A stretch of DNA of 64,000 bases, taken from Prasinococcaceae sp. CCMP 1430 (taxonomy: Eukaryota; Plantae; Prasinodermophyta). Every line of letters starts with the position of its first letter. Positions within the stretch are counted from its first letter, which is position 1. Below the pieces are notes generated by a model. The model was given only the letters and a program-made list of their open reading frames with translations. It did not search any database and had not been told where the DNA came from. The DNA lies in the NCBI GenBank assembly GCA_013416795.1, contig RQSC01000007.1, forward strand, positions 25,920-89,919, given 5' to 3'. This document shows positions 39,529 through 57,900 of the stretch, one piece after another. Position numbers and translations under genes: made by a program.

Positions 39529-40813
39529 CTATTTGGTCCTTTTGAAGAAAGAGAAGCCGTTGGTGGCTGTGCTCGCCGGCCTGGCCTTGCTCGACAGCTT
39601 CGCCTTGGTGGTGAGCTTCTTCTTTGGCTGCGTCTTCGCGGCGGTGAACTTCTTTGTGCCGCCGGTACTGAAGTTGAAGAAAGAGAAGCCGTTGGTGGCT
39701 GTGCTCGCCGGCCTGGCCTTGCTCGACAGCTTCGCCTTGGTGGTGAGCTTCTTCTTTGGCTGCGTCTTTGCGGCGGTGAACTTCTTTGTGCCGCCGGAAC
39801 TGAATAAAGAGAAGCCATTGGTGGCCTTCTTCACGCTTTTCGCCTTCTTCGCGGTCGCGGCCTTCTTCGCTGTCGACACCTTCTTCGTGCCCAGTCCGTA
39901 CTTGGACGCGGGCTTCTTGACCTTCTTCGCGGTCGCGGCCTTCTTCGCTGTCGACACCTTCTTCGTGCCCAGTCCGTACTTGGACGCGGGCTTCTTGACC
40001 TTCTTCGCGGGCGCGGCCTTCTTAAGTAACTCAGCCCTCTTCGCTGCCGCGGCTTTCCGGGCTGCTGCGGCCTTCCTCGCCGCCGCAGCTTCCCTCTTCG
40101 CGGCCGCCGCCTTCGCCGCCGCCGCTGTCTTCTTCGCCACCGCGGCTCTCTCCCTCTTCGCTGCGGCCTTCTTCAATGCGACCTGCGTACGAATGTCAGA
40201 TGAATACTTGGGCTTCTTAATCGTAGTCGTAGTCGTAGTCCGGGTCGTAGTCGTCGTCAGGGTCCTAGTCGCGCTCGCGCGCGTCTTGGCAGCAGGCGCC
40301 GCGCGCTTCTTGGCAGCAGGAGTGCGCGCAGCCTTTTTTGCAGCAGGGGCACCACTGCCAAACAAGCCGCCGAGCAATCCCCCAGCGGGCGCCTTCTGAG
40401 AGGCGGCAGACGCGGGCGGCGGGCGGCTGAACGTCTTCAGCTGCCTCGTCTCCACTGAAGCGATGGCCGCGAGTCGCTCGCGCTGGAGCTGCTCCTTAGA
40501 GGGACCACTCTTCACGATGTCTGTGACTTCTGTCTTCAGACCTGAGACTTCTGCCTTGAGTGAAAAGAGTGCACCCGTGAGCTCGGACACCTCACTCTTC
40601 AGCCTGTCTCTTTCGGCCTTCACATCGGAGAGTTCCGCCACGCTCCTCGCGGGCGCAGCCTTGGCAGCGGGCTTGGCCGGAGCCTCTTCCTGCTCCTTCT
40701 CTGCGGCGGGCGCGGGGGCCGGCTTGGCAGCGGGCTTGGCAGCGGGCTTGGCCGGAGCCTCTTCCTGCTCCTTCTCTGCGGCGGGCGCGGGGGCCGGCTT
40801 GGCAGCGGGCTTG
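39529..40813 (-). CDS. Uncharacterised Lys/Ala-rich repeat protein (5' part in gap)
   Basis: Open frame with PAAK repeats, a short coiled coil, two 26-aa repeats (78 nt) and two 44-aa repeats (132 nt). Confidence 0.6.
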
Positions 40814-41382
40814 NNNNNNNNNNNNNNNNNNNNNNNNNNNNNNNNNNNNNNNNNNNNNNNNNNNNNNNNNNNNNNNNNNNNNNNNNNNNNNNNNNNNNNN
40901 NNNNNNNNNNNNNNNNNNNNNNNNNNNNNNNNNNNNNNNNNNNNNNNNNNNNNNNNNNNNNNNNNNNNNNNNNNNNNNNNNNNNNNNNNNNNNNNNNNNN
41001 NNNNNNNNNNNNNNNNNNNNNNNNNNNNNNNNNNNNNNNNNNNNNNNNNNNNNNNNNNNNNNNNNNNNNNNNNNNNNNNNNNNNNNNNNNNNNNNNNNNN
41101 NNNNNNNNNNNNNNNNNNNNNNNNNNNNNNNNNNNNNNNNNNNNNNNNNNNNNNNNNNNNNNNNNNNNNNNNNNNNNNNNNNNNNNNNNNNNNNNNNNNN
41201 NNNNNNNNNNNNNNNNNNNNNNNNNNNNNNNNNNNNNNNNNNNNNNNNNNNNNNNNNNNNNNNNNNNNNNNNNNNNNNNNNNNNNNNNNNNNNNNNNNNN
41301 NNNNNNNNNNNNNNNNNNNNNNNNNNNNNNNNNNNNNNNNNNNNNNNNNNNNNNNNNNNNNNNNNNNNNNNNNNNNNNNNNN
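40814..41382. other. Assembly gap (N run)
   Basis: Continuous N. Confidence 1.
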
Positions 41383-42160: not shown

Positions 42161-45100
42161 ATGGCGCGGTGCAGTGCGCTCGCGCTCGTGCTCGGCGCCG
42201 CCGCGGCGGCGGGGGCCGCCGCGCAGTCGGCCGACCTCTTCGTGACGGAGCTGCTGCAGCGGCCGATCACGCTGATCACCAAGGGCGTGTGCGCCGCCGA
42301 GAACTTCGACACCCCGGTGGGCCTCACCGTGCCCTCGCAGATGGTCCCGTGGGACGGCGGCGACTTCACCTTCTCGCTGCGCGTCGACACCGACATCCCC
42401 GACGACAAGCCGTGGTCGTGCTCGGGCTACTCGTGCGGCGAGTCGAGCACCGGCGCGCTCTTTGGCATCAACGGCCAGTTCTCGCTCGGCATGTCGGACG
42501 TCTTCTCGAAGATCAAGATCACCATCCCGTCCATTCCGTCGATGTACCACGCGCAGGAGGGCGTCGGCTCGCTTTCGAAGTCGATCGACGGTCGCGCGAG
42601 TTCGAAGCGCCGCGCGCTGCTCGCCACCGAAGACAGCGCCACCGACGGCGGTGACGGCGCGCTCCTCGATGCGCCAGGAGCCGTGGTCGCGAACGCCACC
42701 TCGCGCGGTCTGAAGTTCTACGGGGGCAAAGGCGGCGGCGGATGGAATGGCGGCGGCGGTGGCGCGGCCAATCTGCCCAAGAAGGACGACAATCCCGACG
42801 AGTACGACGTCACCGTCATGCGCCGCGGCTCCCAGGTTGCGGCCTGCGTCAACGGCGACATGGTGGTCGAGTGGACCGACGTCGAGTACTGGGCGGAGGG
42901 TGAGATCATGCACGATGCGCCCTACTCCGAGGCCGACGGCCAGGTGTTCTTTGGCTACACGACGCCCCAGCACTGGGGCCCCTCGTCGGGCCAGCCGCCC
43001 TCCTCCCCGGCCTTTTCCATCCCCGGTGAGTACAAGAGCGCGCGGATCGCCAACAAGGCCTTCGACACGTGCGAGGAGGCCGTGGCCGCCACGCTGGATG
43101 CCGTGGAGGCGGAGGACGGCTCGCTCATTCCATACGCCGACGAGGCAGCCAACGTCAAGCCAAAGGTGGAGCTCACCTCGTCACTCGGCTCGTCGATGTT
43201 CGTCAACGACGAGACGACCATCAGAGTGCGCGCCACCGACGCCGATGGCGAACCCATCAAGGTGACGGTGACCTTCTTCGCCCGCCCGCCCGAGGAGTGT
43301 GACTGGCCGCAGTGCAACTCCAAGTCCACCCACCTGATCAACGGGACGGGCGAGGCCGAGCTCGAGATCAAGAATTTGTGGCCCTTCCCCGGGCGCTTCC
43401 TCGTGCGGGTCGTGGCCACCGACTTCCGCGGCGGCATCGACGTGCTCGACGTGCCCTTCATGGTTCACAAGATTGGGGACACCAACTTCAGCGCGCCGTG
43501 CTGCCGCTACGCGGTGGAGACGATCCACTACGCGCCGAAGAAGGGCCCCCACAACACCAGATGGACCAACTCGGGCGACCCGTACGAGCGGCTGTACAAC
43601 TACCAGATCATCGCCGACCCCTTCCCCGAGCAGCGCCTCGACGTGCTGTCCTGTAAGGGCATGCACCATGCGGGCCCCGGGACGTCGATCAACTTCGGCG
43701 TGTACATGAACAAGGACCGCGGCTCGAGCCAGCGCTTCGTGCTCGTCCCGACCACGAACGGCTGCGGCAGCACCTACTCGCACCCCTACCTTGACTATGG
43801 GGCGGCCTCGGAGGAGGGCTCCACCAACGACGCTGGGCTGGCGTGCGGATGCACCAAGGGCGGCACCAAGCTCATCATCGAGGAGGGCCTGGGCCTGGAC
43901 AACATGAACCAGTTCTACATCCGCGTGTCCTACGGCCGCATGTCGCTGCACTGGGACCCGCCCATCTTGCCCCCCGTGAACGGGCGCGCATCGGTGAGCG
44001 ACATCACCGATGCCTTCGATGGCAACCCGTTCTTTCGCCACTTCATGTTCTACCAGGAGCAGAACCCCGGCACGGGCAACTCAGGCACTGGTGGCGGCAA
44101 GATGTCGCAGCTCTCTGGCTGCGACTTCGGCTCGGGCAAGATCCCCGGCATCATCATTGCGCACGAGATCGGGCACGCGTGGGACCTTGCGCACGCCGAG
44201 ATGTGGACCAACACCGACTCCTCGCAGGTGTCGATGAAGGACCCCGCGAGCTCGCAGGGCCAAGGTTTCACGGAGTACATGGACTACTGGTCGGTGATGG
44301 GCAGGGGTATTGACTTCAACGAGGTCGATCGCCTGCGCCTCGGGTGGATCCACGAAACAGAGCAGAAGCTCTGGCTGAAAGCGGACCGCGCGGTCGTCAA
44401 GGAGGAGATCCTCGTGCTGCACCCCGTCGACCGCGCCGAGTCCAAGGGCAACCGCCTCATGCTGACTTTCGAGGGCAACGAGGCGCCTGTGTTCCTGGCG
44501 TGCATGTTCCGCTCGTTCAGCGGCTCCCCGCGGGACTCGCTCCGCCTGGGCAGGTGGGGTGGCTTCTCGCGCGGCAGTGTCAGCACGAGTCAGCACCTCC
44601 AGGGCAACATCCAGGGCTTCAGCTGCATCCGATCGAAGGGTGGCTCGAAGCGCCTCAGCCGCGACGACTTCCGTGTGGACTTCAACGTCCTCGATGGCGA
44701 CTACCCAAGCCTGCTGCCGCGGAGCGCGGGCTCCAACCCTCCGGAGGGCGGCCTCGCCAACGGTCTCGCGGCCGGCAAGACATGGTACTACCAGGAGGGC
44801 GGCATGTCCGTGTCGGTGCTCAACATCGGCGAGGACGCCTGCGACACGCCCCCGCTCTACCCGCTGTTCGACGAGTGGGGCGTGAACACGTACGAGTGCA
44901 TGTCTGTCAAGGTCAAGACAGGCCTGGAGGTGGACAGGCCCTTTATGGGCCGCAAGGTCACGGTGGGCTACACGCTCGCCGACGCCGCGGTGCCCGTGCT
45001 GGCGAACACGGGCAAGCAGTGCGGCGAGGTGGATGTCAAGCTGGCGGTGAGTGTCGAGCTCAGCGTGGAAGGCGAGGAGGACCTCGAGCCTGAGGCCATC

Positions 45101-48100
45101 GCCTGGCGCGATGCCAGGGGCAAGGTCGTCTTCAGCGGCTCGACCAGCGCGAACCTACCGCTCGTTTCGGGGAGCGAGGTGACCATGTACGCCTCCTGGG
45201 ACGACTCGACGCAGGCGCGCCTGAAGATCGAGATCACCGCGCTGACGGCCACACAGGCCACCCTCAAGATGACGTCCATTCGGTTGCACGACGGCGCCAA
45301 GAAGGAGGAGGAGGACCTGGGCACTGAGACCGTTCCCATCGACGGCGCGAGCCTCGACCTCGGCTCCGCGCGCGGCATCACGCTCTTTAACGAGGCTGGC
45401 ACCAAGCCCGCACTCGGCAACGGCTTTGTGGTGAACGCCGACGGCCTGCTGCCGGTCACCTCCTGCCGCGCTTTCACCGTGACGATGCTCGCGGACCTCT
45501 CCAAGGCCGAGGACGGCGACGTGCTCTTCTCCATGTCGGACGAGCTCGTCGATCACCCCAAGCTGCTCGTTAAGATTGGCGTGACCTCGTCGTATTGGAG
45601 CACGTCAAAGACGCTCTCGGTGTGCTGGCTCACCGGGCAGCCGTGCATGCCCGTGACCTTGCCCGACACCGGCTCGACCTCGCACCTCGCGCTGGTCGTG
45701 CAGGAGAACGGCGACAACGTGGAGGTGCAGGTGTTCTTCGACGGCACCGAGCTCGGCGATCGCGGTGACTACAAGCCTTTCCTGCGCAACGGTTGGTGCA
45801 TCCCCGATGCGAGCCAGTACCCTCAGCGCGGTTCGTGGAGCTCGAGCCCGAAGGCGTACGGCAACTGCGCCAGCGAGCCGCTCGGTGCCGGCCTGCCGCC
45901 CATGGAGGCGCTGCGCTTCGGTGGCGCCGCGGCCAAGGGCAAGAGCGGCCCCAACGGCGTGGCCACGCACGCGCGCTTCTACAACTTCCCGCTGTCAAGC
46001 TCGCAGATCAAGAGCGACAACGAGTGCGCCTCTCGCAAGACGTGCGAGTCTGAGCTCGGTCTCGGTGCAGCCGGTGACTCGCCGCCAGTGCTCGAGACGC
46101 TGCGCGTGGCGCGCGAGGACGGCGAGGACGACGACGACGACGATGGGGCGCTCGAGCTCTTCACTGACACCGAAGCGGTCTTCGAGTACACGGCACGTTC
46201 TGTGACCGGTGAAGGCACCGTCGGATTCGAGGTCAGCACTCGCGAGGGCGGCGTAATCCACACGGACAGCGCCGAGGGCGAGGTCTCCGGCACCTTTAAG
46301 GTGTCGTTCTCTACGCCGGGCACGTACGCCGTGGCTGTGAAAATGACCGCCGGCGAGGCTGTGGCCACCGAGTACGCCATGGCGCACGTGCACCGCCCAG
46401 GGTCGGGCCTCGAGCACAAGGGGCGCTTCGTGCTGCCGCGCGGCGCCGACCTTGACATGTCGATCAACCCCGCCGACCAGTTCTCCGACTTTGACGGCCA
46501 GTACACCTTCTCCAATGTGCTCGTTTTCGACGACGCAGACGCACCGCAGTGCGCGCTCCTCCAGAACCCAACCACCGGTATGCTCATCACCATCGATGCT
46601 GGCGCCAGCACCTTCACCGTCAGCGGACGCACGGGCAGCGCGCCGCCAGCGGCTTACAACAAGGACGGCACCTTCCCGGAGAGGCACCACCTGCAGGTGG
46701 CCACCACCGGCTCGACCACGGAGGTCTTCCTGAACGGCGTCTCCGCCGGCAGCCTCAAGGCCATCGGCCTGAGCAGCCCGGGCGCCGCCGGCGGTGAGCT
46801 GCGGCTTGGAGCCAAGGTGGACAGCGACAAGATCCCGACTTGCGAAGGCGCCGTTGGCAAGGCCAGCTTGTACAACTACTTCATCGGCGCAAACGCGCTC
46901 GAGATGGAGAGGCGCTGCCCCGAGCGCGGCTCGTGCAAGGTCTTCAACATCTGCTCGTACGCGGACACCGACAAGGCGTGCCGCAAGTTCTTCGACATCA
47001 ATGCGGAGCTTGACACGCTCAACAACCCACCGCCGCCTCCGCTGCCGCCGAGCCCGCCGAGCCCTCCGCCGAGCCCGCCGACACCGCCGCCGAGCCCGCC
47101 GCCGCCGCCTTCACCGCAGCCGCCACCGGCGCCGCCGAGCCCTCCGCCGAGCCCGCCGCCGCCGCCTGGCCCGCCGCCGAGCCCACCGCCGTTTCCACCG
47201 CCAAGTCCGCCGCCGAGCCCGCCGCCGCCCCCAGCGCCTCAATACCGCGCCGCGGAGGCGACCATGTTCGACTGCGGCACGTCGGTTCAGCTTCCGCTGA
47301 CGATCGAGGCCATCCTCCAGGTCGATGCGCCATCCGAGTCGGGCGCAGCGCAGGTCATCTGGGCGGCGCACGATGGCAGCGGCGACGATCCGGCGCTCGT
47401 CTTCCAGATTCGCGACGGCAAGCCGGAGCTCAAGTACAAAGGCACGCTCCTTGCGCCGCCGACGCCGCCGCCCAGCCCACCTAACCCTCCGCCGCCGAGC
47501 CCTCCTACCCCACCTCCCATGGGTGGCGGGGGTGGTGGGCTCGAGAGGCCTGATTTGGGCGACGGCGAAGGAGGGCTTGGTGGCATCCCGGACGACATGA
47601 AGGACAAGGTCCCGCCGATGCCCGAGGGTGCGCCCCCTTTCCCTGACAGGCTCGCCGGCCGCAGGCCGGGCGGCCAAAACAAGCCCGACTGGCTCAATGA
47701 TATGACAGGTGGCGGTCACGAGGGCGCCGGTGGTAGCCCCTTCGGCTCCTTCGGCTCCCACGGCGGCCGGAAGATGCTCTTCGGCAGCTGGGGCGGCAAC
47801 AACGGCTCTCCCAGTGGGAGTGGCTCCTCTCACGACGACGACGACGACGACGAGATCCTGGAGTTTACGACCATCTCCGCCGACGAGGGCGCCAACAAAG
47901 AGGGCGCTTGGCAGCACGTAGCCGTCGCGATCGCGCCGCGCGGTTTCGTCTCGATCTACCAAGAGGGCCTGCGCATCGGCACCGGCCAGATCAACGTGGG
48001 CGGTCTGCAGGCCTTCAGCGACTTCTCGCTCTTTGGCTACGCCCACGAGAAAGAGAGGTACTGGCAGAGCAGCCCAAAGGAGTTCACCATGTACGACCCC

Positions 48101-48775
48101 TTTGAGGGCATCATCGACGAGATTCGCATCTACAACACGAGCCTGCTGCTGGAGGACCTCCTCGACATCCGCGCCTCGGAGCCTGCCTCCAAGGGCCTCG
48201 TCCACCACTATCCTTTCTACTACCAGGGCCACGAGCCAGGGGACGTCCGCGAGATTGCCGACGTCGTGGGTGGTAACGACTCGTGCGAGCCGTCCGAGGC
48301 CGGCGAGTGGTACGCCCAAGAGAAGGCTGACGAGGAAAACGAGGCGCAAAACCCGATGAGGTACCCGCAGTGGTACCTCGAGCGAATCGGAAAGAACATC
48401 GTGACCGTCGAGCCGACGATCCTCAAGTTTGTGGAGTCGGACGCTGGCCTTGGCGGGTCGTTCGACGGGCTGTACAGCCCGCCACCGCCGCCGAGCCCGA
48501 GCCCGCCGCCGCCGAGCCCGAGCCCACCACCACCAGGTCAGCCGCCGAGCCCGCCGCCAGAGCCACCGGCTCCGCCGCCGAGCCCGCCCCTCGACTGGTA
48601 TCACTCCCACAATCCCGACCATCACCACCATGACGACGACGAAGATGATGCCCCTGCGTCGCTGCCCAGCGCTCCGCCGAGCCCGCCGCCGAGCCCGCCG
48701 CCGAGCCCCCCGCCTCCGCCGCCTCCTCCGCCGAGTGCACCGCCTAGCCCGCCACCGAGCCCGACGCGACGATGA
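42161..48775 (+). CDS. Secreted multidomain protein, segment 1: signal peptide, LamG-like and Ig/PKD-like modules, M11 (gametolysin-type) metalloprotease, Ser-Pro(n) repeats
   Basis: [22 protein letters not shown] signal, HEIGHAWDLAH (44162-44194), EYMDYWSVMG Met-turn, WQHVAV…FEGIIDEIRIYN LamG motifs, SPPP tracts. Confidence 0.85.
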   Translation: MARCSALALVLGAAAAAGAAAQSADLFVTELLQRPITLITKGVCAAENFDTPVGLTVPSQMVPWDGGDFTFSLRVDTDIPDDKPWSCSGYSCGESSTGALFGINGQFSLGMSDVFSKIKITIPSIPSMYHAQEGVGSLSKSIDGRASSKRRALLATEDSATDGGDGALLDAPGAVVANATSRGLKFYGGKGGGGWNGGGGGAANLPKKDDNPDEYDVTVMRRGSQVAACVNGDMVVEWTDVEYWAEGEIMHDAPYSEADGQVFFGYTTPQHWGPSSGQPPSSPAFSIPGEYKSARIANKAFDTCEEAVAATLDAVEAEDGSLIPYADEAANVKPKVELTSSLGSSMFVNDETTIRVRATDADGEPIKVTVTFFARPPEECDWPQCNSKSTHLINGTGEAELEIKNLWPFPGRFLVRVVATDFRGGIDVLDVPFMVHKIGDTNFSAPCCRYAVETIHYAPKKGPHNTRWTNSGDPYERLYNYQIIADPFPEQRLDVLSCKGMHHAGPGTSINFGVYMNKDRGSSQRFVLVPTTNGCGSTYSHPYLDYGAASEEGSTNDAGLACGCTKGGTKLIIEEGLGLDNMNQFYIRVSYGRMSLHWDPPILPPVNGRASVSDITDAFDGNPFFRHFMFYQEQNPGTGNSGTGGGKMSQLSGCDFGSGKIPGIIIAHEIGHAWDLAHAEMWTNTDSSQVSMKDPASSQGQGFTEYMDYWSVMGRGIDFNEVDRLRLGWIHETEQKLWLKADRAVVKEEILVLHPVDRAESKGNRLMLTFEGNEAPVFLACMFRSFSGSPRDSLRLGRWGGFSRGSVSTSQHLQGNIQGFSCIRSKGGSKRLSRDDFRVDFNVLDGDYPSLLPRSAGSNPPEGGLANGLAAGKTWYYQEGGMSVSVLNIGEDACDTPPLYPLFDEWGVNTYECMSVKVKTGLEVDRPFMGRKVTVGYTLADAAVPVLANTGKQCGEVDVKLAVSVELSVEGEEDLEPEAIAWRDARGKVVFSGSTSANLPLVSGSEVTMYASWDDSTQARLKIEITALTATQATLKMTSIRLHDGAKKEEEDLGTETVPIDGASLDLGSARGITLFNEAGTKPALGNGFVVNADGLLPVTSCRAFTVTMLADLSKAEDGDVLFSMSDELVDHPKLLVKIGVTSSYWSTSKTLSVCWLTGQPCMPVTLPDTGSTSHLALVVQENGDNVEVQVFFDGTELGDRGDYKPFLRNGWCIPDASQYPQRGSWSSSPKAYGNCASEPLGAGLPPMEALRFGGAAAKGKSGPNGVATHARFYNFPLSSSQIKSDNECASRKTCESELGLGAAGDSPPVLETLRVAREDGEDDDDDDGALELFTDTEAVFEYTARSVTGEGTVGFEVSTREGGVIHTDSAEGEVSGTFKVSFSTPGTYAVAVKMTAGEAVATEYAMAHVHRPGSGLEHKGRFVLPRGADLDMSINPADQFSDFDGQYTFSNVLVFDDADAPQCALLQNPTTGMLITIDAGASTFTVSGRTGSAPPAAYNKDGTFPERHHLQVATTGSTTEVFLNGVSAGSLKAIGLSSPGAAGGELRLGAKVDSDKIPTCEGAVGKASLYNYFIGANALEMERRCPERGSCKVFNICSYADTDKACRKFFDINAELDTLNNPPPPPLPPSPPSPPPSPPTPPPSPPPPPSPQPPPAPPSPPPSPPPPPGPPPSPPPFPPPSPPPSPPPPPAPQYRAAEATMFDCGTSVQLPLTIEAILQVDAPSESGAAQVIWAAHDGSGDDPALVFQIRDGKPELKYKGTLLAPPTPPPSPPNPPPPSPPTPPPMGGGGGGLERPDLGDGEGGLGGIPDDMKDKVPPMPEGAPPFPDRLAGRRPGGQNKPDWLNDMTGGGHEGAGGSPFGSFGSHGGRKMLFGSWGGNNGSPSGSGSSHDDDDDDEILEFTTISADEGANKEGAWQHVAVAIAPRGFVSIYQEGLRIGTGQINVGGLQAFSDFSLFGYAHEKERYWQSSPKEFTMYDPFEGIIDEIRIYNTSLLLEDLLDIRASEPASKGLVHHYPFYYQGHEPGDVREIADVVGGNDSCEPSEAGEWYAQEKADEENEAQNPMRYPQWYLERIGKNIVTVEPTILKFVESDAGLGGSFDGLYSPPPPPSPSPPPPSPSPPPPGQPPSPPPEPPAPPPSPPLDWYHSHNPDHHHHDDDEDDAPASLPSAPPSPPPSPPPSPPPPPPPPPSAPPSPPPSPTRR

Positions 48776-51140
48776 CCGCCTGCGAGCCCGTGCGCTCGAG
48801 CCCGCCGCCGAGCCCGCCGCCTCCCACTCCGCCGCCGAATCCTCCGCCACCGAGCCCACCTCCCGGTGCGCCTGTCGCTGGACCGCCGCCGCCTCCTCCT
48901 CCACCGCCGCCCCCGCCGCCGAGCGCCCCGCCGAGCCCTCCGCCAAGCCCTCCGCCGACTCCGAGCGCGCCGCCGAGCCCGCCTCCGAGCCCACCGCCAC
49001 CACCGCCGCCGCCGCCGTCAAGCCCGCCGGCACCGCCGCCCTCTCAGCCTCCAAGCCCGCCGCCGCCGCCGCCGCCGCCGCCGTCGATGCCTCCGAGCCC
49101 ACCGCCAGGCTCGCCACCGCCTCCGAGCCCGCCGGCGCCACCGCCGAGCCCGCCCATCGAGTGGCTGCACTACATCGCGCCCTCGCCACCGACGCCGCCT
49201 CCGGTGCCCAGCGCACCGCCGAGCCCGCCGCCACTGCAGCCGCCGAGCGCGCCACCGAGCCCGCCGCCGCCGCCCAACCCGCCGCCGCCACCGCCGCCTG
49301 CGCAGCCGAGTCCGCCCATTGAGTGGTGGCACCCTGGTCGGTACCACGCCCCGAACCCGCCTCCGCCGCCTCTTACGAAGAAGCAGAAGAAGGCCGCGAA
49401 GAAGGCCGCGGAGGCGGCGAGCTCGGACGGGGGCGTGTGTGACGGCCTGAACAAGAAGAAGTGCAAGAAGCAGGCGGGCTGCACGTACAAGAAGAAGCAG
49501 TGTATTGAGGACACGAGCGCGCGCCGTGCCTTGCTCCAAAAGAAAATGAAGAAGAGCAAGTCCGCTGCGCCACCCCCGGCGCCGCCTGCCGTCGTCGAGG
49601 CTGTGTTCGCCTCCGTGCTCGACTGCGGCGAGGGTTTCCCTTCGTCGCCCTTCACTATCGAGGCCTTCGTGTACGCGAGCACGGCCGCCGAGTACACCGA
49701 GACGCAGCGCCTCGTGACCGCCGAGGCGGTCGACGCGTCCGAGTTCAGCGTCGCTTGGCACCTGTCAATCCGCCGCGGCTCGCCGGTCTTCGGCTACGTG
49801 GCGGATGATGAGGTCGAGGAGGTTGCGGCCCCCTCGCGCTTCGAGCTGCGAAACCGCTGGCAGCACATCGCCGTCAGCGTGGGCGACGGCGCCATCGTGC
49901 TATACCAGGAGGGCGTGGAGGTCGCGCGCGCCGCGATGCGCGGCGAGCCGGCTGCCGCGTCCAACATTCAGCTGGGCGGCTACGCCTCGCGTGCCTGGGA
50001 GGGCGCGGAGGCCGTGCATTCGGTCTTTGATGGCCTCATCGACGAGGTGCGCGTCTTCTCCGGCGTGCGATCGGCCGCGGACATCCTCAGCTACGTAGGT
50101 GTGTCCGGTACGACCGCCCAGATGCCGACATTGCAGCGCCTGTACAACGTGCGCTTCGACCCTGCGTCCTCGAGCATCGCACCGGCGGTCCTCAGGGACG
50201 CGACCGGCAACAGTGGCGGCTGCACGGTGTCGCCCGAGGCTTACGCCGCGGGCTACGGCATTGAGTGGCTTCCTGATGGCTCGCAGTCTGCTGGCCTTGA
50301 GCTCCCCGCGGTGGTGGCGTCACCGCCTCCCGCTCTCATCGAGCTGCCGCCGCTGTCGCTGTCGCCGCCGCCGGCTATCGCCACCGCCGAACCGCCACTG
50401 GCGGTCGGGGAACCGACCGCCTTCGCGACGCCTCCGGCTTATGATTACGATTCAGAGGAGTGCGCAACGCCGCCATCGAGGACCTTCACGCTGCCTGGAG
50501 GTGGCATGCTGCCCTTCAGCGGCGCCTCAGGCTGCTCGCCGATGTCGTCGCCCTTTGGGTCGACCTCGTCGTACATGACCGCCTACGAGCACGCGAGGCT
50601 GGACGGCCACGGGAGCTTCGGGTGCCAGACCTTTGACGCAGCAGGCGACGGCCTCACGCTGACCTTCTCGCTCAAGCCCGCGCGCGCGTTCACCGGCGCT
50701 GTGGCCGCCATGCTCGATGGCGACGGCGATGCCTTTATGACCATTGGCATTCAGACGGGCGGCTGGCTCGAGGCCAGGGTGCTTTCGGACGAGGCCACCG
50801 GCCGCAAACTGGGCGTCACCCTCAAGGAGCCCGCGTTGGCCTCGGGCGACAGGTGGACCACGTGCAGCCTCGTGCTGTCGGGGTCGAACGCCAGGCTTGC
50901 TTGCGGCACCGCCTCGGTTTCTGAGGATGCCGCGAACGACTTCCCGCTGCCGGACACTGCCGCGCTCATCATCGGCGCCCACGAGATCGATGCGTCGGGC
51001 CACGGCTTTGAGGGCGAGGTCGACGACGTGCGCGTGTGGTCCAAGGCGCTGCGCACGAGCCAGATCCAGGTCAACCGTGACAACGAGCTCGTCGGTGACG
51101 AGGATGGCCTTGCTGCGTACTACCGCATGGGCGAGGCTGG
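48772..51140 (+). CDS. Segment 2 of the same locus: Ser-Pro(n) stalk plus two LamG-like domains
   Basis: SPPP repeats, WQHIAVSV…FDGLIDEVRVF, GFEGEVDDVRVW…GLAAYYRM. Confidence 0.8.
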
Positions 51141-54100
51141 AGGGCACGACTGTGCTCGACGCCACCGGCCATGGCGCCGCGTGCGAGTTCGTCAGCACAG
51201 ACCTCGACACGCCCGCTGCAAGCATTTTCGTGCATGTGCCTCTGACCGAACGCCGCCTGTATGCGCCCGAGCCCAAGCCGGCACTCACGAAGGATGGCGG
51301 GCGCCGCCGCTCTTTGCTGCAGACGGTGCCGCCGGCGCCGGCAAGCGCGGTCACTCTCGCGCCCGAGGGTGCCAAGGCCACGTGCGCGCAGATCCTCGCG
51401 GAGACTCCGGCGCTCGAGGGTCTCGACGGCCAGCGTGTGGTCGCGCTGCCCGATGGCGCCGCACAGAAGGTGTACTGTGACATGACGCGCTTTGGCGGAG
51501 GCTGGACGCTGCTCGTGAACAACGCGGGCGGTGGCGGATTCACCCAGGACAACGTGCTGCGCCGCTACCCCGCGAATCCCAACATCATGTCCGACTACTC
51601 CAACTTGGCCATGACGGACACGATCCTCGCCGCCGGCGCCACCGGCCGCCCCTGGCACTACATGGTGGAAGTTGTGGTCAAGCCCGACGCGGACGCTGCG
51701 GTCACTGAGTCTCGCGGCGCGGTGTACTCCGCTCCGGCCAACTCCTCGCTGATCGGCGGCAACTCAAAGCGGGCATCGGTCAGCCTGGTGGAGCGCTTCG
51801 GCGAGTGGCGTGCGTCGCCGCTCGGCCTGCAAGACCTTCTCCCTACCGTTGTGACCGATGGCTCCGACGATGACGAGACGCACGCGCTGCTCTCGACGGG
51901 CATCCGCCCTCTCGCCAGCCCGTGGGGTGCACTGGTCAATGCCGGCGAGCTACCCGACGCTTGCAACGCTGCCACGACATTCTTCGATGCGTGCGTGGTT
52001 AACACGCGCCTCTGGGTGCGGGAGGCCGGCGACGCGCCCGTCGAGGAGCCCGAGGAGGTGACGGTGAGCGCGTGCGACCTCGCGCTGTGCGAATCGGCCG
52101 CCACCAACCAGTGCAAGCAGGCACAGTGCCTCGACGATGGCACGTGCGCGTTCGAACTCAACAAGCCCGACGGCACCGCGTGCGATGACGGCGACAGCTC
52201 GACGCACCTCGACGAGTGCGACGCTGGCGTGTGCCTCGGCTACACGCTCGTGTCGCGCCAGGTTGCGCCCCTGACGCCTGCGCAGGTAGAGCGTGCGGCG
52301 TCTGGCGAGCGTGTCGGTGATGCGGACGCTTCGTTCGTGGATGCGGCCGCCATCAAGAGCCTCAGCTCGCGCGGGGGCGTCAACTACGCGCTGCACTGGC
52401 CGGGCACGCGCTTCAGCACGCAGACGTGGACGCAGAAGAGCTACCCATGGGAGTCGAGGACCACCTCAAAGGCACGCGGTTTTGCCGCGCGCAAGGTAAC
52501 GCTGGTCGGCTTCGCTGGACTGGTCGGTGACGGCGGTGACGAGCTCGCGGCGCTCGCGCAGGCACCCGCAGTCGGCTTGAAGGTTGGCGCCGCGCGCTCG
52601 TACTTCGACGGACTGCCCGGCCCGGGCGTGCTGCCAGTGGACACCATCGAGCTCTACGCGCGCGAGGTGCACTCGGACGGTGGCGTTGACGAGACCGCGA
52701 CCTGGACGATCACAGTGATTACGGTCCTCGTGGTCACGCTCGCGGGGCTCCTTCTGCTGAGCCTGCGCCGAATGAGGAAGAGGGGCGAGGACGTCAAGAT
52801 GGGCATGCTCTCCGGGCTGAGCGTCGCTGCTGGGCACCTCGGCATTCCAATGAGCGAACGCGTGCTCGAAGGCACGGGACACAGGTCGTTCTCCGGCTCG
52901 TTCCTGGCATCGCCGACGGCGCGCGCGGAGGCGGCGCTCATTGCCGTGCGTTCCGAGGTGTGCAAGAACTCGACCGAGCGCTGGGGGAAGCTCAGGAAGC
53001 AGTTCGAGGCGGGCTCGTACCCCTTCCGCCCGCACATGCGCCACCGACTCGTCAAGCTCATGCGCCGCTACTTGAAGCCCGACGGCAGGCTCGACCGCAA
53101 CAAGCTCCAGCGCCTCGAGGTGGCGCAGCGCGTCACCATCAAGCGCTCACAGGGCGCGTCGCTGAGCGAGCGCCTCAAGGACGAGCTCTTCCTCATCAGC
53201 GCGTACGTTTTCGACACCCTCAGCCCAGGCGTAGACGCCATGGGCAAGTTCTGGCCCGTGCTCAGCCCGCTGGTGTGTATGGTCATCTTCGGCGTGCACT
53301 CCTTCATGGCGGGACAGTACACCACCTACCAGACGGAGCTTCGCTACCGCGAGTGCGAGGCCGAGCAGGCGATCGCAGCCGCAAGCCGCGCGGAGACCCA
53401 GGCGCTGCTCGCGCAGGTGACTGCCAGTGCGGCGCTTGCACTCGAGTCCGCAAACGCTGCGCAGGAGACTGCAGCGCTCGTCGCCAATGCCACCATTGCC
53501 GAAGCAATCGACGCCACCGACACGACCATCGCCACACTCACCGCGATGTCCGACAACCAGGCACGCCAGCAGCAGGAGCAGGGAGGCAAGCAGGGCGATC
53601 TCGGCAACGACGTGTTCGCGCGGGTGCATGACGCACATCGCGCGCAGGATCGCGTGGGCGCGCTCGAGGCCGAACTCGACCTCGACAATCTCAGTCGCGA
53701 GGAGCAGGTCATGCTCGAGCAAGCCCGTGCCGACAAAGACCGGCAGGACGAGAGCGTGAAGTCGCTCTTTGATGAGGTCAGCGCCCTCGACTCAGAGATG
53801 CAGGCCGGCCGCGACCTGGCCGACAACGCGGAGACCGTCGCCACGCTTCACGAAGAGAAGCAGCAGACACGCATCAGTGCCGCACAGGGCCTCGCTGATC
53901 TTCAGATCGGCCAAGCCCAGGTGATTGCGTCAGGGGCTACCGATCAACTCGATAGCGCCGCTGCTGCTACTGCCGCCGCCAACGACCTGCTCGATCCGTG
54001 GGCGGCCGTTGGCACCCTCGACGCCAGCTTGCTCGCCAGCGATGCCGCCGCGGTGGCGCTGCTCGAGGCTAAGCTCAGCGCCGTGTCCGGCAACGGCTAT

Positions 54101-54811
54101 GGCGCCGTGGAGCACACCTGCGAGCTCTTTGCCCCCACGCGCGCCTCCCCTGGCATCTTCGAGTCGAGCCTGCACGGCTTCTCAAAGCCTTTTGACGCCG
54201 AGTACCTCGTGCGCTGGGGTGCGCGCTACGTGCCGTCGCTTCTCGAAGACACCGAGGGCTATCGCTTGATTGCGAGCACCTTTGTGCACGGCAGCTGGAG
54301 CCAGCTCTCCACTTCGATGCTCGTTATCGGCGTCGTGGGCATTCTGCTTGAGCGCCGCTACGGCTCGCTGCGCTTCCTGTCTGTCTTCGTGCTGTCAGCG
54401 CTGGGTGCCAACTTCGTCGGCGCGCTTGCCGACTCGGAGTGCGACGTCGTCACCGGCGCCACGGGTGCTACCTTCGGCCTCATGGCGTTCTATGTTCTCG
54501 ACGCGGCGCTGTGCTCCTTCCACGCCGTGGCGCCCCCCACCATCTTCGCCTGGTCGTCGGCCACGCTCGTGTCGCTCATCCAGATTGCTGCGGCGTTCAC
54601 GGGCGGCTCGATCGGCCACCTCACCAACTTCGGCGGATTCGTCACCGGCCTCGTCGTGTCGACGATCATGATCCCGCACTTTGTGCAGGAGCGTCTGGAG
54701 GTGCTCGTGCTGCCCGTGACGGCGATCGGGATCCTTGTGGTGTTCGCCGTGCTGCCGGCCGTGTTCTACGTGCAGAGCACCCCTTACTGCGCGGAGCAGT
54801 GGGAGCTCTAA
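51138..54811 (+). CDS. Segment 3: fibrinogen-C-like domain, Cys-rich repeat, TM, coiled coil and C-terminal inactive rhomboid domain
   Basis: VYCDMTRFGGGWTLLV; PDGTACDDG…CDAGVC; TM WTITVITVLVVTLAGLLLL; WGARYVP…GYRLIASTFVH, LERRYGSLRFLSVF, GATG, HLTNFGG. Confidence 0.8.
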
Positions 54812-54945
54812 GGGAAGCGTAGACTATTAATTAAATACAGTATTATTCTATGGGACTCTGACATTGCGAGCTTTGCACGCGTCCGCGCCAGCGCTGCCTC
54901 CGCCAGCCAGCTGCTTCGCGCCCCGCGACGCAATAGTCGATGCGG

Positions 54946-57900
54946 CTAGTTGTTCGCCGCGTCCCACGCCGTCCGCCAAGTCGAGAAAGCGGGAAGCGCG
55001 TACACGCGCACCTTGCCGAGGTTGCCACCGCTGGCGCTGGTGGCATCGGCGTCGTCATCATCGGTCGAGTCATCCCCACAAAAGCCTGCTGCGACACGCG
55101 TGCCGTCGCCCGAGATCGCCTCAGCGCAGCCGGCGCGGTCGCCCGACTCCGCACCTTCAATGCGATTGGTGATCTCGACCCAGTAGCCGCCGCTGCTGTG
55201 ATTGGCGAGCTCGGGGACGTCGCTCGCATCCCACAGCTCGAAGATTCGCGTGGCGCCCTCGTTCGTGTCTGCAAACAGGGTGTCTTCCCCTGTCGCGCCG
55301 ATAGAGACGCGCGCGCCGTCTGCACGCCAGGCCGGCCGCGCCCGCCCCGAGGATCCACGCGCCGGTGGTCGTGACAAATGAGCGTGGTCCGTGTCAGCAG
55401 CCGTCAAACGCGCGCCGACAGGCGTGGGCAGCGCTCGGCGCACGCACCTGTTGATATGGAAACCGACTCGCCCAAGCGAACGTCGCCGCCGTTGAATGCA
55501 ACCCCTCCCACGACATTCCCGGTCCAACCCAAGGAAGACCACGAGTCACCTCCGGCGTCGTAGTCATAAGCGCGCACAACGCCATCACCATAAAAATAGC
55601 CAGGCGCGCCCACTGCCACTCGGGTGCCGTCGCCTGAGAGAGCGACAGCTCCTCCCTGTTCATCGCCTGAAAACGAGCTTGTCATGTCGTCGCCCACCTG
55701 GGTCCAGGCTCCAGAGGTGTACTCCAGCACGCGCGCGCGGCCGCACGAGCCGTACCAACCGCTCACGAAGCCGGGCTCGCCGATTGCGATCTTGGTGCCG
55801 TCAGAGCTCAGCGATACCGACGTGCCTGCCTTGCTCTGGTCGTTGGCCCCATCCACGTCGGCACCCACTTGCGACCACGCGCCGGTGCTATACGCGAACA
55901 CTCGCACGCTGGGAGTCAAGGTGCGTGATGAAGGGTTGGTGCAACAAGAGGTGTGGGTATTGTGTGGACGCGTGCACGCGCGCAGCGTCAGTGGTTGCTC
56001 GCGCTTGCTCGTGCGCGAACGCGTCCTTAGCTCCAAAGCTTGTCTCAACGCGAAGTGGTGAGCGAGCGAGCACGCGCGCGCGCGCGTTTGCGCGCGCGCA
56101 CTCGCACGCACCTGCCCGCATTGGTGCCCCCGTCGCCGTTCTTAGGCGCACCCACGGCCATCGTCAGGCCATCGGCAGCGAGCGCCACAGACGAGCCGAA
56201 CTCATCGCCCGCGGCCTCGCCGTCGATGTCTGATCCCAGCTGCGTCCAGGCCGCCAGCACATACTGAAAGACGCGCACGTGACCCGCGTCGGCACCAGTG
56301 CCGTCGTTCGCGTAGCCACCGATAGCGACGATACTTCCGTCCGAGGACATGGCGACCGTGCGGCCGAATCCATCGTCAGCGGCCTCCCCATTGATGGCGC
56401 TCCCGAGGAGAGTCCAAACCCCTCCGCTCTCTTCGAGCACGCGCACCTGGCCCGCACCGCTGCTGGCATATGGCATGCCCACGGCGATGCGCGTGCCATC
56501 CGACGACATCGCGACAAGCTCGGCGCTCATCGTGGTGAACGAGGCAGCGGCGGCATCCCCCCCTATTCCAGCGATTGTGTTGATCCCGTCTATAGTTGCA
56601 CCAACCTGCGTGGGGTCGCTGAGCGTGGGGTACATGTTGAACATGCGCGGGGGTGGCGGGCTTGGTGGCGGTGATGGCGGCGGGGATGGCGGCGGCGGGC
56701 TTGGCGGTTGGGACGGCGGCGGGGGTGAGGGTGGAGGTGAGGGCTGCGCGGCGGGCGGGAACGCGCGCGCGCGGCCGAATTAACGCCGCGTTTTTTGGGC
56801 GGAAAAGGCGGCGAAAAAAACGCGCGCGGCGCCGGGGCGGCGTGCTGGCGGCGGCGGAGGCGGGCTAGGTGAGGGCGGGGGTGAGGGCGGGGGTGAGGGT
56901 GGAGGTGAGGGCGGGGGTGAGGGCGGAGGTGAGGGCGGGGGTGAGGGCGGCGGTGAGGGCGGAGGTGAGGGCGGGGGTGAGGGCGGAGGTGAGGGCGGGG
57001 GTGAGGGTGGAGGCGAAGGCGCAAGCACCGGGGGGGGTGAGGGCGGCGCCGCACTCGCTGCAAGAGGCGGCAGCGGAGGTGGAGAAGGTGGCGTGCCCGG
57101 CGCTGGCGCCTTCGATGACGGTGGTGAAGGCGGGCTCGCGATCTTGAACTCCGCCGGCTGAGGCGGCAGCAGCACTGTTGGCTCGGCCGGGGGCGCGACC
57201 GCCGCGACCAATGTGGAAAGAGATACCGGGGGCTGGCGGCCTTCAGTGCAGCGGTCAAGCAGGTCGAGTGCACGTTCCTGCGCCAGCAGGCCCTTCTCAG
57301 CCAGGCAGCCGTACTTTGAGCTTTCAACCTGAGCCTCAACGCGCACGAGGGCCCAGCATCCCGGCGAGAGGCTACACGCAAATCCGTTGTCAGCACCCCC
57401 CTCAGTCGCAGTGTCCATGCCCTGGAAGAAATCGGCGCAACCCGTATCTGTGTAGACCGCCTCGACGTGGTCGCACGGATCAAGTTCGATCACGGATGGC
57501 GAGAAAAAGTACACCGACTCGATGTCCAGCTCGACGCCCTTCGCGCGCATGGTCGACGAGATCTCAAACTGTTTGTTGACTATGGTCTCTTCGTACATCT
57601 CCACCTGTTCTTCGTCCTCGGCAGCGATGGCCACGTCGAGCTCGATGCCGCCACTGAAGGTCGCATCGGGGGGACTCGCGTCGTCCATCTCAAGCAGAGC
57701 CCGGCGCAATCTCCGCGCTCGGCGTGTTGCACCGCCATCGGCCACCGCCGGGCTCTCGGCTGGACGGATGTTGAAAGTGCGCACGTCGCTCAAGTCGGCA
57801 CCGATGATATCGGCAAAGGACACGCGCGTGGCCATTTCTGCAGCGTCGTCGAAGCTTGTCACGTCGGGATACCTTCGAAGCCCCAGAGTGGTAATAACCT

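What the first reader, a model, noticed from the sequence alone, without database searches (positions are those of the whole stretch)
42161..54811. Candidate ~4200-aa metalloprotease plus inactive-rhomboid fusion protein (sheddase with built-in iRhom)
Seen: three consecutive same-strand ORFs run signal peptide, LamG/Ig, zinc protease (HEIGHAWDLAH plus Met-turn EYMDYWSVMG, M11/gametolysin pattern), LamG and Ser-Pro(n) stalks, fibrinogen-C-like, Cys-rich, TM, cytosolic segment, TM, coiled-coil loop and rhomboid core. Segments 2 and 3 have no signal peptide of their own. Known: in animals the inactive rhomboids (iRhoms) bind and control the metalloprotease ADAM17 as separate proteins, and algal gametolysins remodel the wall/ECM. 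Inference: this alga may encode both partners in one chain, a self-contained surface shedding or wall-remodelling unit. I do not recall this architecture being described.
Basis: partly seen in the sequence, partly recalled or inferred. Interest (0 to 1): 0.9.

Follow-up and report, generated by a model that had tools for sequence, protein, structure and literature searches.

The report
Giant metalloprotease fused to dead rhomboid
A marine single-celled eukaryote carries one roughly 4,200-residue surface-protein gene that joins a zinc protease, sugar-binding-type domains on proline-rich stalks, and a catalytically dead rhomboid membrane module. I found no description of this combination in the literature searched, and it loosely mirrors the animal ADAM17/iRhom pair.

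Summary
Three same-strand ORFs (42161-48775, 48772-51144, 51146-54811) carry a signal peptide, a conserved HExxHxxxxxH zinc site with a Met-turn, four Laminin_G_3 domains, Ser-Pro stalks, a weak fibrinogen/intelectin-like domain, a TM helix and a Pfam-significant rhomboid domain.

Both ORF breaks look private to this draft assembly. All 10 near-identical (98.4-99.3%) marine metagenome contigs fetched carry 2 extra bases at junction 2 and read straight through it. Two independent contigs (L009, L010) hold one 2,220-2,270-codon open frame running from the ORF1 tail to the rhomboid stop. Other contigs lack the window's TGA and ATG at junction 1.

A 35-46%-identical orthologue in a second species has the same domain order, with introns. 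Contig L019 bridges its protease half and its rhomboid half.

The rhomboid module is a pseudoprotease: Ser to Thr, His to Asn, and the TM2 His/Asn pair to Gln/Ser, all conserved in the orthologue. It is not an iRhom (no GPx motif, no Cys-rich IRHD). The protease is metzincin-like but is not Pfam M11.

So the fusion is real and apparently undescribed. The iRhom-like regulatory role is only an analogy. There is no RNA or protein evidence.

The parts
42161..42226 (+). Start codon and signal-peptide-like N-terminus (22 residues, hydrophobic Ala/Leu core, AQS end)
   Evidence: hydropathy only, no dedicated predictor was run
42227..43714 (+). N-terminal ectodomain: ConA/LamG-like region with a Gly-rich insert, then an Ig-like module
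   Evidence: Only sub-threshold Pfam hits (DUF1961 E 0.013, Big_7 E 0.085). The region is conserved in relatives P0005 and P0006.
43715..44557 (+). Metzincin-like zinc peptidase core. Zinc motif HEIGHAWDLAH at 44162-44194; Met-turn EYMDYWSVMG at 44273-44302.
   Evidence: H, E, H, H are invariant in 18 homologues. The motif is present in 21 database relatives. Only sub-threshold matches to reprolysin, MMP, serralysin and M11.
44558..46492 (+). Conserved region of unknown fold downstream of the protease core
   Evidence: Collinear tblastn matches to orthologue contig L005 at 42-48% identity
46493..46879 (+). Laminin_G_3 domain 1
   Evidence: Pfam E 8.2e-07
46997..47554 (+). Ser-Pro-rich stalk 1, in two blocks that flank the start of a split LamG-like domain
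47855..48445 (+). Laminin_G_3 domain 2
   Evidence: Pfam E 2.6e-12
48446..49374 (+). Ser-Pro-rich stalk 2 (about 310 codons), running across junction 1
   Evidence: The orthologue has an uninterrupted stalk of about 330 residues at the same place.
48747..48775 (+). Junction 1: 27-29 nt between the TAG in the ORF2 frame and the TGA ending ORF1. It sits inside a 40-nt patch (48760-48798) that departs from the SPPP repeat seen in environmental contigs.
   Evidence: The deletion haplotype L009/L010 removes 48663-49513 (851 nt, which is 2 mod 3) and gives one open frame.
49375..49587 (+). Lys-rich, Cys-containing linker module
   Evidence: It is absent from haplotype L009/L010.
49588..50085 (+). 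Laminin_G_3 domain 3
   Evidence: Pfam E 1.4e-28; also Laminin_G_2 at E 3e-06
50653..51054 (+). Laminin_G_3 domain 4
   Evidence: Second Pfam stretch in ORF2; coordinates
51135..51145 (+). Junction 2: the window lacks 2 nt (GA) after 51135 that all 10 conspecific contigs carry
51377..52045 (+). Fibrinogen-related/intelectin-like domain (VYCDMTRFGGGWTLL)
   Evidence: Pfam 17.5 bits, below the cut-off. PDB intelectin and ficolin hits at E 0.0013-0.06. Highly conserved in P0002.
52058..52675 (+). Cys-rich module and conserved juxtamembrane domain (ends with the GPGxLPVDTxELYAR motif)
   Evidence: Invariant columns in alignment A2
52694..52768 (+). TM0: single membrane-spanning helix that ends the ectodomain
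   Evidence: Hydropathy peak 2.68, followed by an RRMRKRG stop-transfer sequence
52775..53239 (+). Linker of 155 residues, inferred to be cytosolic, with two conserved blocks
53240..53314 (+). Rhomboid TM1
   Evidence: Hydropathy; position relative to the WR-type loop motif RWGARY
53315..54211 (+). TM1-TM2 ecto-loop of 299 residues, rich in Ala/Leu/Glu/Gln/Asp, with only 2 Cys (o3 residues 737 and 992), both invariant in the orthologue
54212..54673 (+). Rhomboid core, L1 motif to TM6. TM2 motif HGSWSQLSTS (54281-54319), GATG in place of GxSG (54455-54466), TNFGG in place of AHxxG (54614-54649).
   Evidence: Pfam PF01694 E 3e-20. Alignment to H. influenzae GlpG 2NR9. Conservation in P0002.
54689..54811 (+). 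Seventh helix after the core (6+1 form), short tail and TAA stop
   Evidence: The alignment to iRhom1/2 chains runs into this helix.

Best explanation
Positions 42161-54811 (+) hold one gene of about 4,216 codons for a giant cell-surface protein.

Domain order: a signal peptide; ConA-like and Ig-like modules; a metzincin-type zinc endopeptidase; four LamG domains spaced by extensin-like Ser-Pro stalks; a fibrinogen/intelectin-like domain; a Cys-rich and juxtamembrane domain; one TM helix (TM0); a 155-residue cytosolic linker; and a 7-helix (6+1) rhomboid-fold module with a 299-residue helical loop between TM1 and TM2.

The two frame breaks belong to this draft assembly or strain, not to the gene as it exists in the sea.

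The rhomboid module has lost its serine-protease chemistry (Ser to Thr, His to Asn, TM2 His/Asn to Gln/Ser). It most likely works as a membrane-embedded anchoring and helix-binding module for the tethered ectodomain.

The zinc protease is held far from the membrane on the stalks and aimed by lectin-type domains. It would cut extracellular matrix or surface glycoproteins.

Shown here: the architecture, the continuity in wild alleles, the conserved zinc site and the dead rhomboid site. Inferred: topology, protease activity, substrates and what the rhomboid module does.
For: - Junction 2: all 10 conspecific contigs read GAGGAGCTGGAG where the window reads GAGGCTGGAG. Each has an open frame from its 5' end to the rhomboid stop.
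- Junction 1, deletion haplotype: L009 and L010 come from different samples and different assemblers. Each holds one open frame of 2,267 or 2,264 codons covering window 47133-48662 plus 49514-54811. The missing 851 nt equals the ORF1-to-ORF2 frame offset modulo 3.
- Junction 1, other contigs: L011-L013 show plain SPPPP repeats, with no ATG and no TGA, where the window has its odd 40-nt patch.
- ORF2 has no signal peptide and no room for a promoter (ATGA overlap), yet it encodes Cys-rich ectodomain modules.
- Orthologue: L005 (protease half) and L002 (rhomboid half) are collinear with the window gene. They overlap by 84 nt and are bridged by L019. Canonical GT-AG introns mark it as a eukaryotic gene.
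- Selection: 20 synonymous to 16 non-synonymous differences against L001, roughly dN/dS 0.27.
- Zinc site: invariant across the family.
- Rhomboid: Pfam E 3e-20. Catalytic positions are replaced in the window and in the 35-40%-identical P0002.
- Draft quality: N gaps and single Ns in the window.
Against: - There is no transcript or peptide evidence of any kind.
- No contig shows a full-length, undeleted allele that is intact across junction 1. I have only a deletion haplotype and contig ends lying inside repeats.
- No conspecific environmental contig was found for 42161-47132. The link from the protease to the ORF1 tail therefore rests on the window itself and on the orthologue.
- The orthologue has its own unresolved frame change at the end of the stalk. 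It needs a putative 151-nt GT-AG intron to be read through.
- L018 carries different sequence upstream of the same locus.
- The protease matches no curated family at threshold. Two AlphaFold models were poor, and Foldseek found nothing.
- Topology comes from hydropathy alone.
Confidence: 0.75

Rival explanations
1. The gene is real in the species but is a pseudogene in the sequenced strain. Both frameshifts (1 nt at junction 1, 2 nt at junction 2) would be true mutations, perhaps acquired in culture, so this strain makes only a truncated, secreted protease-stalk protein.
For: There are two independent breaks within 2.4 kb. The 40-nt patch at 48760-48798 differs from the wild sequence by several substitutions plus an indel. 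All 10 wild contigs are intact at junction 2.
Against: The assembly is a draft, with N gaps and single N bases. GC-rich repeats are error-prone to sequence. Differences from L001 still show purifying selection, 20 synonymous to 16 non-synonymous. There are no further stops or indels in the 12.6 kb.
Confidence: 0.25
2. There are two gene products by design: a secreted protease-stalk protein that ends in the stalk, and a separately made LamG-FReD-TM-rhomboid membrane protein, possibly joined only occasionally by ribosomal frameshifting.
For: Both species show a frame discontinuity near the second stalk (window; orthologue).
Against: ORF2 has no signal peptide, no conserved ATG and no upstream non-coding DNA. 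L009/L010 encode a constitutive fusion. The two discontinuities differ in position and in direction (-1 versus +1). The orthologue's can be removed by one canonical intron.
Confidence: 0.08
3. The rhomboid module is still an active protease that uses Thr as its nucleophile and cuts TM0 in cis, releasing the whole ectodomain.
For: A type-I helix sits directly upstream of a rhomboid fold. Thr is conserved at the Ser position.
Against: The general-base His is Asn in both species, and the upstream His of the window is Ala in P0002. The TM2 His/Asn pair is Gln/Ser. From my own knowledge, not checked here: Ser-to-Thr mutants of GlpG are used as inactive forms.
Confidence: 0.04

Closest known systems
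iRhom1/2 with ADAM17 (animal sheddase complex)
   Same: A metzincin ectodomain on a single TM helix is paired with a 7-helix rhomboid-fold pseudoprotease. That pseudoprotease has a large extracellular insert between TM1 and TM2 and a cytosolic segment before TM1. In animals, iRhom TMD1 binds the ADAM17 TMD and the insert buttresses the protease (PMC11248996).
   Different: - Here the two parts are one polypeptide, not two.
- The motif is GATG, not GPxG.
- The TM1-TM2 loop is a 299-residue, Ala/Glu/Gln-rich segment with 2 Cys, not the roughly 230-residue, 16-Cys IRHD (PMC6451368).
- Sequence similarity to iRhom chains is not significant (E 0.06-0.12).
- The protease has no reprolysin, disintegrin or prodomain match.
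- iRhoms are described as metazoan.
Rhomboid serine proteases (GlpG, PF01694)
   Same: The fold-level Pfam match is significant, and the L1 WR-type motif, the TM2 motif, the TM4 GxxG and the TM6 GxxxG spacing can all be recognised.
   Different: All four catalytic or oxyanion positions are replaced. An extra N-terminal TM helix carries an ectodomain of about 3,500 residues.
Gametolysin / peptidase M11 of volvocine algae
   Same: An HExxHxxxxxH zinc motif with a downstream Met, on proteins with hydroxyproline-type Ser-Pro stalks. The distant family members that carry a name are from Edaphochlamys and Gonium.
   Different: The Pfam M11 match is far below threshold (E 0.13), and those algal relatives do not hit M11 either. 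The third zinc-motif position is Asp, not Gly, in the window and its close relatives.
Uncharacterised protease family found here (P0018 from Edaphochlamys at 3,716 aa, P0023 from Gonium at 3,247 aa, and metagenomic proteins of about 1,000-1,200 aa)
   Same: The same catalytic domain at 22-33% identity, with invariant H, E, H, H and Cys, in large multidomain extracellular proteins.
   Different: None of the four checked (P0018, P0023, P0038, P0050) has a rhomboid domain. P0018 and P0023 carry TSP1 and EGF modules instead; P0038 and P0050 matched no Pfam family.

Membership tests
Rhomboid superfamily (Pfam PF01694) | Significant match to the rhomboid domain model | tested here: met
   E 3e-20, 73.3 bits against a cut-off of 22.6, profile positions 3-141 of 143
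Active rhomboid protease | Catalytic Ser in the TM4 GxSG motif | tested here: not met
   GATG in the window and GSTA in P0002; Thr aligns with the Ser of the GLSG motif in H. influenzae GlpG (2NR9)
Active rhomboid protease | Catalytic His in the TM6 AHxxGxxxG motif | tested here: not met
   TNFGGFVTG in the window and TNIGGLLCG in P0002; Asn sits at the His position
Active rhomboid protease | TM2 His and Asn that support the oxyanion | tested here: not met
   The window motif HGSWSQLSTS has Gln and Ser at those positions. The Gln and the HGSWSQ block are invariant in P0002; the Ser position is not conserved there.
iRhom | GPx replacing GxS at the active site | tested here: not met
   GAT, no Pro; definition from PMC6451368
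iRhom | Cys-rich iRhom homology domain (about 230 aa, 16 Cys) between TMD1 and TMD2 | tested here: not met
   A large loop does sit at the same position, but it has 299 residues, 2 Cys and 64 Ala
iRhom | Seven TM helices and a long cytoplasmic N-terminal domain | tested here: inconclusive
   A 6+1 helix pattern by hydropathy, and a 155-residue segment before TM1. That segment is preceded by TM0 and an ectodomain rather than by a free N-terminus.
iRhom | Specific sequence relationship to iRhom1/2 | tested here: inconclusive
   Profile A4 against PDB gives GlpG at E 0.013 and iRhom1/2 at E 0.057-0.12, none significant
Metzincin clan | HExxHxxGxxH zinc motif | tested here: met
   HEIGHAWDLAH, with Asp at the Gly position. 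The Gly form (HETGHRLGFKH and similar) occurs in the more distant family members. H, E, H, H are invariant.
Metzincin clan | Conserved Met-turn after the zinc motif | tested here: met
   The Met of DYWSVMG aligns with the Met of LDxMxCC in nearly all members that cover that stretch
Metzincin clan | Metzincin fold | tested here: inconclusive
   AlphaFold2 mean pLDDT 43.6 and 59.6. Foldseek against PDB found no match at E of 0.001 or better.
Peptidase M11 (gametolysin, PF05548) | Match to the family model at its gathering score | tested here: not met
   E 0.13, 11.7 bits against a cut-off of 21, covering the Met-turn region only
ADAM/reprolysin (M12B) | Match to reprolysin models; disintegrin domain | tested here: not met
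   Reprolysin_2/4/5 at E 0.04-0.13, below their cut-offs. No disintegrin hit.
Laminin_G_3 (PF13385) | Match at the gathering score | tested here: met
   E 1.4e-28 (two stretches), 2.6e-12 and 8.2e-07
Fibrinogen_C (PF00147) | Match at the gathering score | tested here: not met
   17.5 bits against a cut-off of 22, with 26 residues aligned. PDB intelectin at E 0.0013 and ficolins at 0.006-0.06, N-terminal subdomain only.

The most novel reading that the evidence does not exclude
The protein is a self-contained sheddase or matrix-remodelling unit. Its rhomboid-fold pseudoprotease would bind TM0 in cis and use its TM1-TM2 ecto-loop to control trafficking, latency or substrate access of the covalently tethered metzincin. 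That would be an independent, non-animal invention of the iRhom-ADAM17 logic, fixed as a gene fusion.
Probability: 0.2. Interest if true: 0.85.

Novelty: new variant of a known kind. Interest (0 to 1): 0.62.

Why it matters
Rhomboid pseudoproteases are thought to work by recognising the TM helices of client proteins, and the best-studied client is a metzincin sheddase. A natural fusion of a metzincin ectodomain, its TM helix and a dead rhomboid, conserved in at least two marine protist species, would be 'Rosetta-stone' evidence that this partnership is older or more general than the animal iRhom-ADAM17 pair. It would also give a single-chain system for studying how a rhomboid fold handles a client helix.

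The finding also defines an unassigned zinc-protease family with 82 representative clusters; its only named members are in volvocine algae.

On the practical side, it shows that the reference assembly mis-states this gene at two points, so annotation is likely to split or truncate it.

Tried and rejected
- Protease family by sequence. PDB phmmer found nothing. The PDB profile search and the Pfam scan of 18 members gave only sub-threshold hits on the zinc motif.
- Protease family by fold. Two AlphaFold2 runs on alignments of 18 and 37 sequences gave mean pLDDT of 43.6 and 59.6. Foldseek against PDB gave no match. I did not interpret the models.
- Word-indexed homologue searches. ORF1 (residues 1-1600) and the LamG-2/stalk piece found nothing within their length windows.
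- JGI metagenome scans. An exact 26-mer next to junction 1 and a profile of the FReD-to-rhomboid part both came back empty.
- An intron at junction 1. Enumerating GT-AG pairs gave 380 formally frame-restoring options, because Ser AGC codons supply the AG. This is uninformative. The L009/L010 gap has no GT-AG, GC-AG or AT-AC ends, so I read it as a deletion haplotype, not a spliced intron.
- De Bruijn collapse as the cause of the L009/L010 gap. Rejected, because the joint shares at most 1-5 nt and was recovered by two different assemblers.
- Identifying the organism. The neighbouring genes are generic eukaryotic ones: topoisomerase II, NAD kinase, a DRC/NYD-SP28 flagellar protein, zuotin, riboflavin kinase, an E2 enzyme. 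There are no tRNAs. Names are hidden for the window's own proteins.
- Literature. No paper combines rhomboid with gametolysin, and none was found that describes a metalloprotease-rhomboid fusion.
Full report
WHAT IS IN THE WINDOW

The window has about 68% G+C and carries assembly gaps (N runs at 4287-5165, 23551-23853 and 40814-41382) plus two single Ns. Its other genes are eukaryotic and mostly unbroken single ORFs: a one-chain topoisomerase II, NAD kinase, a DRC/NYD-SP28 flagellar protein, zuotin, riboflavin kinase and an E2 enzyme. The source is therefore an intron-poor eukaryote in a draft assembly. Nothing in the window shows that it is photosynthetic.

The finding's region holds three same-strand ORFs. 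Their useful parts are o1 (42161-48772, 2,204 codons), o2 (48772-51144, 791 codons) and o3 (51146-54808, 1,221 codons). Together that is 4,216 codons.

DOMAIN CONTENT

- o1 starts with a signal-peptide-like sequence.
- Pfam gives significant Laminin_G_3 matches four times, and a significant rhomboid domain at the C-terminus: E 3e-20, 73 bits against a cut-off of 22.6.
- Ser-Pro stalks lie at o1 residues 1613-1798 and from o1 2096 to o2 201.
- Hydropathy finds one strong helix (o3 517-543, called TM0 here), a second helix at 699-723, then the rhomboid helices and a seventh helix at 1182-1214.
- The fibrinogen-like call is weak. Pfam gives 17.5 bits against a cut-off of 22. The best solved relatives are intelectins and ficolins at E 0.0013-0.06, over the N-terminal subdomain only.

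THE PROTEASE

HEIGHAWDLAH (44162-44194) and EYMDYWSVMG (44273-44302) sit in a domain that matches no curated family at threshold. Peptidase_M11 gives E 0.13, the reprolysin models give 0.04-0.13, and PDB profile hits are all at E 0.1 or worse and confined to the zinc motif.

An exhaustive search of 1.84 billion cluster representatives found only 82 relatives. Twenty-one of them carry the motif. Close relatives have HE[IM]GHAxDL[AS]H, and distant ones have the classical HExGHxxGxxH.

In an 18-sequence alignment the only invariant columns are one Cys and the H, E, H, H of the motif. A Met aligns downstream in nearly all members that cover that stretch.

This is a conserved metzincin-type zinc site in an unassigned family. 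Its only named members are hypothetical proteins of 3,200-3,700 residues from Edaphochlamys and Gonium. Those carry TSP1 and EGF modules and no rhomboid domain.

Two structure predictions were too poor to use, and Foldseek found nothing.

THE RHOMBOID MODULE IS A PSEUDOPROTEASE

Aligned to H. influenzae GlpG (2NR9):
- The catalytic Ser position is Thr (GATG).
- The catalytic His position is Asn (TNFGG).
- The TM2 His/Asn pair is Gln/Ser.

The 35-40%-identical homologue P0002 keeps Thr, Asn and Gln, and it lacks even the nearby His of the window.

It is not an iRhom. iRhoms are defined by GPx at the active site, a 16-Cys IRHD between TMD1 and TMD2, and a long cytoplasmic N-terminus (PMC6451368). 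Here the motif is GAT. The TM1-TM2 loop is 299 residues with 2 Cys and 64 Ala. Profile matches to iRhom1/2 chains are not significant, at E 0.06-0.12.

What it shares with iRhoms is the layout: a cytosolic segment, TM1, a large ecto-loop, TM2-TM6 and TM7.

JUNCTION 2

The o2 frame reads ...YYRMGEAGG and the o3 frame continues TTVLDATG... with no room for an intron.

A Tara Oceans scaffold that is 99.1% identical (L001) has two extra bases (GA) after window position 51135 and reads straight through. All 10 conspecific contigs fetched, from different samples and sources (ENA assemblies and Logan), read GAGGAGCTGGAG there. Each has an open frame from its 5' end to the rhomboid stop.

The break is private to the window.

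JUNCTION 1

The frame must change between the TAG at 48744-48746 (o2 frame) and the TGA at 48773-48775 (o1 frame), in the middle of a Ser-Pro stalk of about 310 codons. Three lines of evidence argue that this is not a gene boundary.

(a) The deletion haplotype. Cluster mates of P0001 include P0097 and P0104 (2,224 and 2,223 residues). Their contigs L009 (MEGAHIT) and L010 (SPAdes, a different sample) match window 47133-48662 and 49558-55073 at about 99%. They lack 851 nt (48663-49513) and a further 18 nt.
- The 851 nt equal 2 modulo 3, which is exactly the o1-to-o2 offset. The o1 tail, o2 and o3 therefore form one open frame that runs off the 5' end of the contig.
- The joint has no splice-site dinucleotides and only 1-5 nt of shared sequence. 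I read it as a natural deletion haplotype rather than an intron or an assembly collapse.
- If the window simply lacks one base in the stalk, the deletion becomes a clean 852 nt (284 codons). This step is inference.

(b) Other contigs. L011-L013 reach upstream to about 48757-48793. They show plain SPPPP-coding repeats in the o2 frame to their ends, with no ATG and no TGA. The window has a 40-nt patch there that differs by several substitutions and an indel.

(c) ORF2 itself. It begins inside the stalk, overlaps the o1 stop (ATGA), and has no signal peptide, yet it encodes disulfide-type ectodomain modules.

What is missing is an undeleted wild allele read intact across the junction.

A SECOND SPECIES

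P0002 and P0005 are 35-46% identical to the window protein. They lie on Tara contigs of about 60-62% G+C.

L005 carries the protease half with canonical GT-AG introns. One of them splits HE|MGH of the zinc motif. L002 carries LamG-LamG-FReD-TM-rhomboid, with an apparent GC-AG intron (no GT donor lies before the stop) inside the FReD domain. Both are collinear with the window gene.

L005 and L002 overlap by 84 nt. Contig L019 joins L005 11991-12499 (100% identity) directly to L002 223-7691 (99.85%). The protease half and the rhomboid half are therefore adjacent, on the same strand and only intron-sized distances apart, in a lineage that has diverged to 35-46% identity.

Caveats:
- L019 lacks a 301-nt stretch that L005, L002 and L018 carry. 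That stretch is flanked by ACCAT on both sides.
- In this species the stalk and the downstream modules are in different frames. One canonical 151-nt intron spanning the insertion site would reconcile them, but it is unproven.
- The upstream 2.4 kb of L018 does not match L005, so L018 may be chimeric.

SELECTION

Between the window and L001, the o2/o3 part shows 20 synonymous and 16 non-synonymous differences. With roughly three non-synonymous sites for every synonymous site, that gives dN/dS of about 0.27. The gene has been under constraint.

HOW IT PROBABLY WORKS (INFERENCE)

The signal peptide sends about 3,500 residues outside the cell. TM0 stops transfer, and the RRMRKRG that follows it fits a cytosolic face. 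The 155-residue linker returns to the membrane at rhomboid TM1, which gives the usual rhomboid orientation with the TM1-TM2 loop outside.

The zinc protease sits at the distal end, beyond the stalks and the LamG and FReD-type domains. This suggests action on extracellular matrix or surface glycoproteins.

The dead rhomboid fold cannot be a serine protease. By analogy with rhomboid-like proteins, whose hallmark is TM-helix recognition (PMC11248996), it most likely anchors the protein and may bind TM0 or client helices.

Whether it regulates the protease as iRhom2 regulates ADAM17 is untested. I give that reading about 0.2.

NOVELTY

Full-text searches found no description of a metalloprotease-rhomboid fusion, and no paper that links rhomboid and gametolysin. 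The domain families are all known, and so is the idea of a metzincin partnered with a rhomboid pseudoprotease. What is new is the covalent architecture, the non-iRhom pseudoprotease lineage (G-x-T, T-N-x-G-G) and the unassigned protease family.

VERDICT

- Observation: confirmed.
- Single-gene reading: well supported, about 0.8.
- M11 and iRhom labels: rejected as family memberships.
- Functional analogy to iRhom-ADAM17: open.

Noticed in passing
window 48663-49513 and 49543-49560, versus L009/L010: Natural length polymorphism of the second stalk. Two environmental contigs lack 851 nt (most of the stalk plus the Lys/Cys-rich linker) and a further 18 nt (KMKKSK). Other contigs (L001, L011-L017) keep them.
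   Followed up: yes
L005 12500-12662 plus L002 85-222 (301 nt); absent in L019 at about position 505: Presence/absence insertion inside the orthologous gene, flanked by ACCAT on both sides, with internal inverted-repeat-like ends. The contigs break in it, and the copy in L018 is only 96.3% identical. It looks like a mobile, introner-like element.
   Followed up: partly
L005 about 7045-7169, about 7985-8193 and about 8630-8896; L002 2461-2626: The orthologue has at least four introns (three canonical GT-AG, one apparently GC-AG). One of them splits the HE|MGH zinc motif. The window gene has no intron over 12.6 kb.
   Followed up: partly
L005 and L019, near L019 position 400: In the second species, the Pro-rich stalk and the following Cys modules are in different frames. 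The sequence is identical in two contigs from different samples.
   Followed up: partly
window 39529-40813 (probably the - strand), running into the N gap at 40814-41382: Tandem repeats of 132, 78 and 75 nt at 98-100% identity. On the minus strand they would encode a Lys/Ala-rich repetitive protein. The gap sits inside this array.
   Followed up: no
window 56868-57007: A 12-nt tandem repeat (GGTGAGGGCGGG, 11.7 copies). The environmental contigs align here with many shifted matches, so copy number probably varies.
   Followed up: no
window 54854-54861: An 8-nt indel (GACTCTGA) relative to L001, 43 nt after the stop codon. A convergent minus-strand ORF starts about 30 nt after the stop.
   Followed up: no
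window 15415-15567: A (TGC) run of 51 copies inside overlapping long ORFs.
   Followed up: no
window 24486-28775; 9131-11833 (-); 16492-18570; 59062-61104: Single-ORF eukaryotic topoisomerase II, NAD kinase, a flagellar DRC/NYD-SP28 protein and a zuotin-like DnaJ/zinc-finger protein. Long intron-free genes appear typical of this genome.
   Followed up: partly
L010 7058-7601: The last 544 nt of this contig do not match the window and end in a poly-G run. This is probably an assembly or sequencing artefact at the contig end.
   Followed up: no
P0018, P0023, P0021: The zinc-protease family has distant members in Edaphochlamys debaryana and Gonium pectorale (3.2-3.7 thousand residues, with TSP1 and EGF modules). 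Another member lies on a eukaryote-like contig of assembly GCA_041443045.1. None is annotated as a peptidase.
   Followed up: partly
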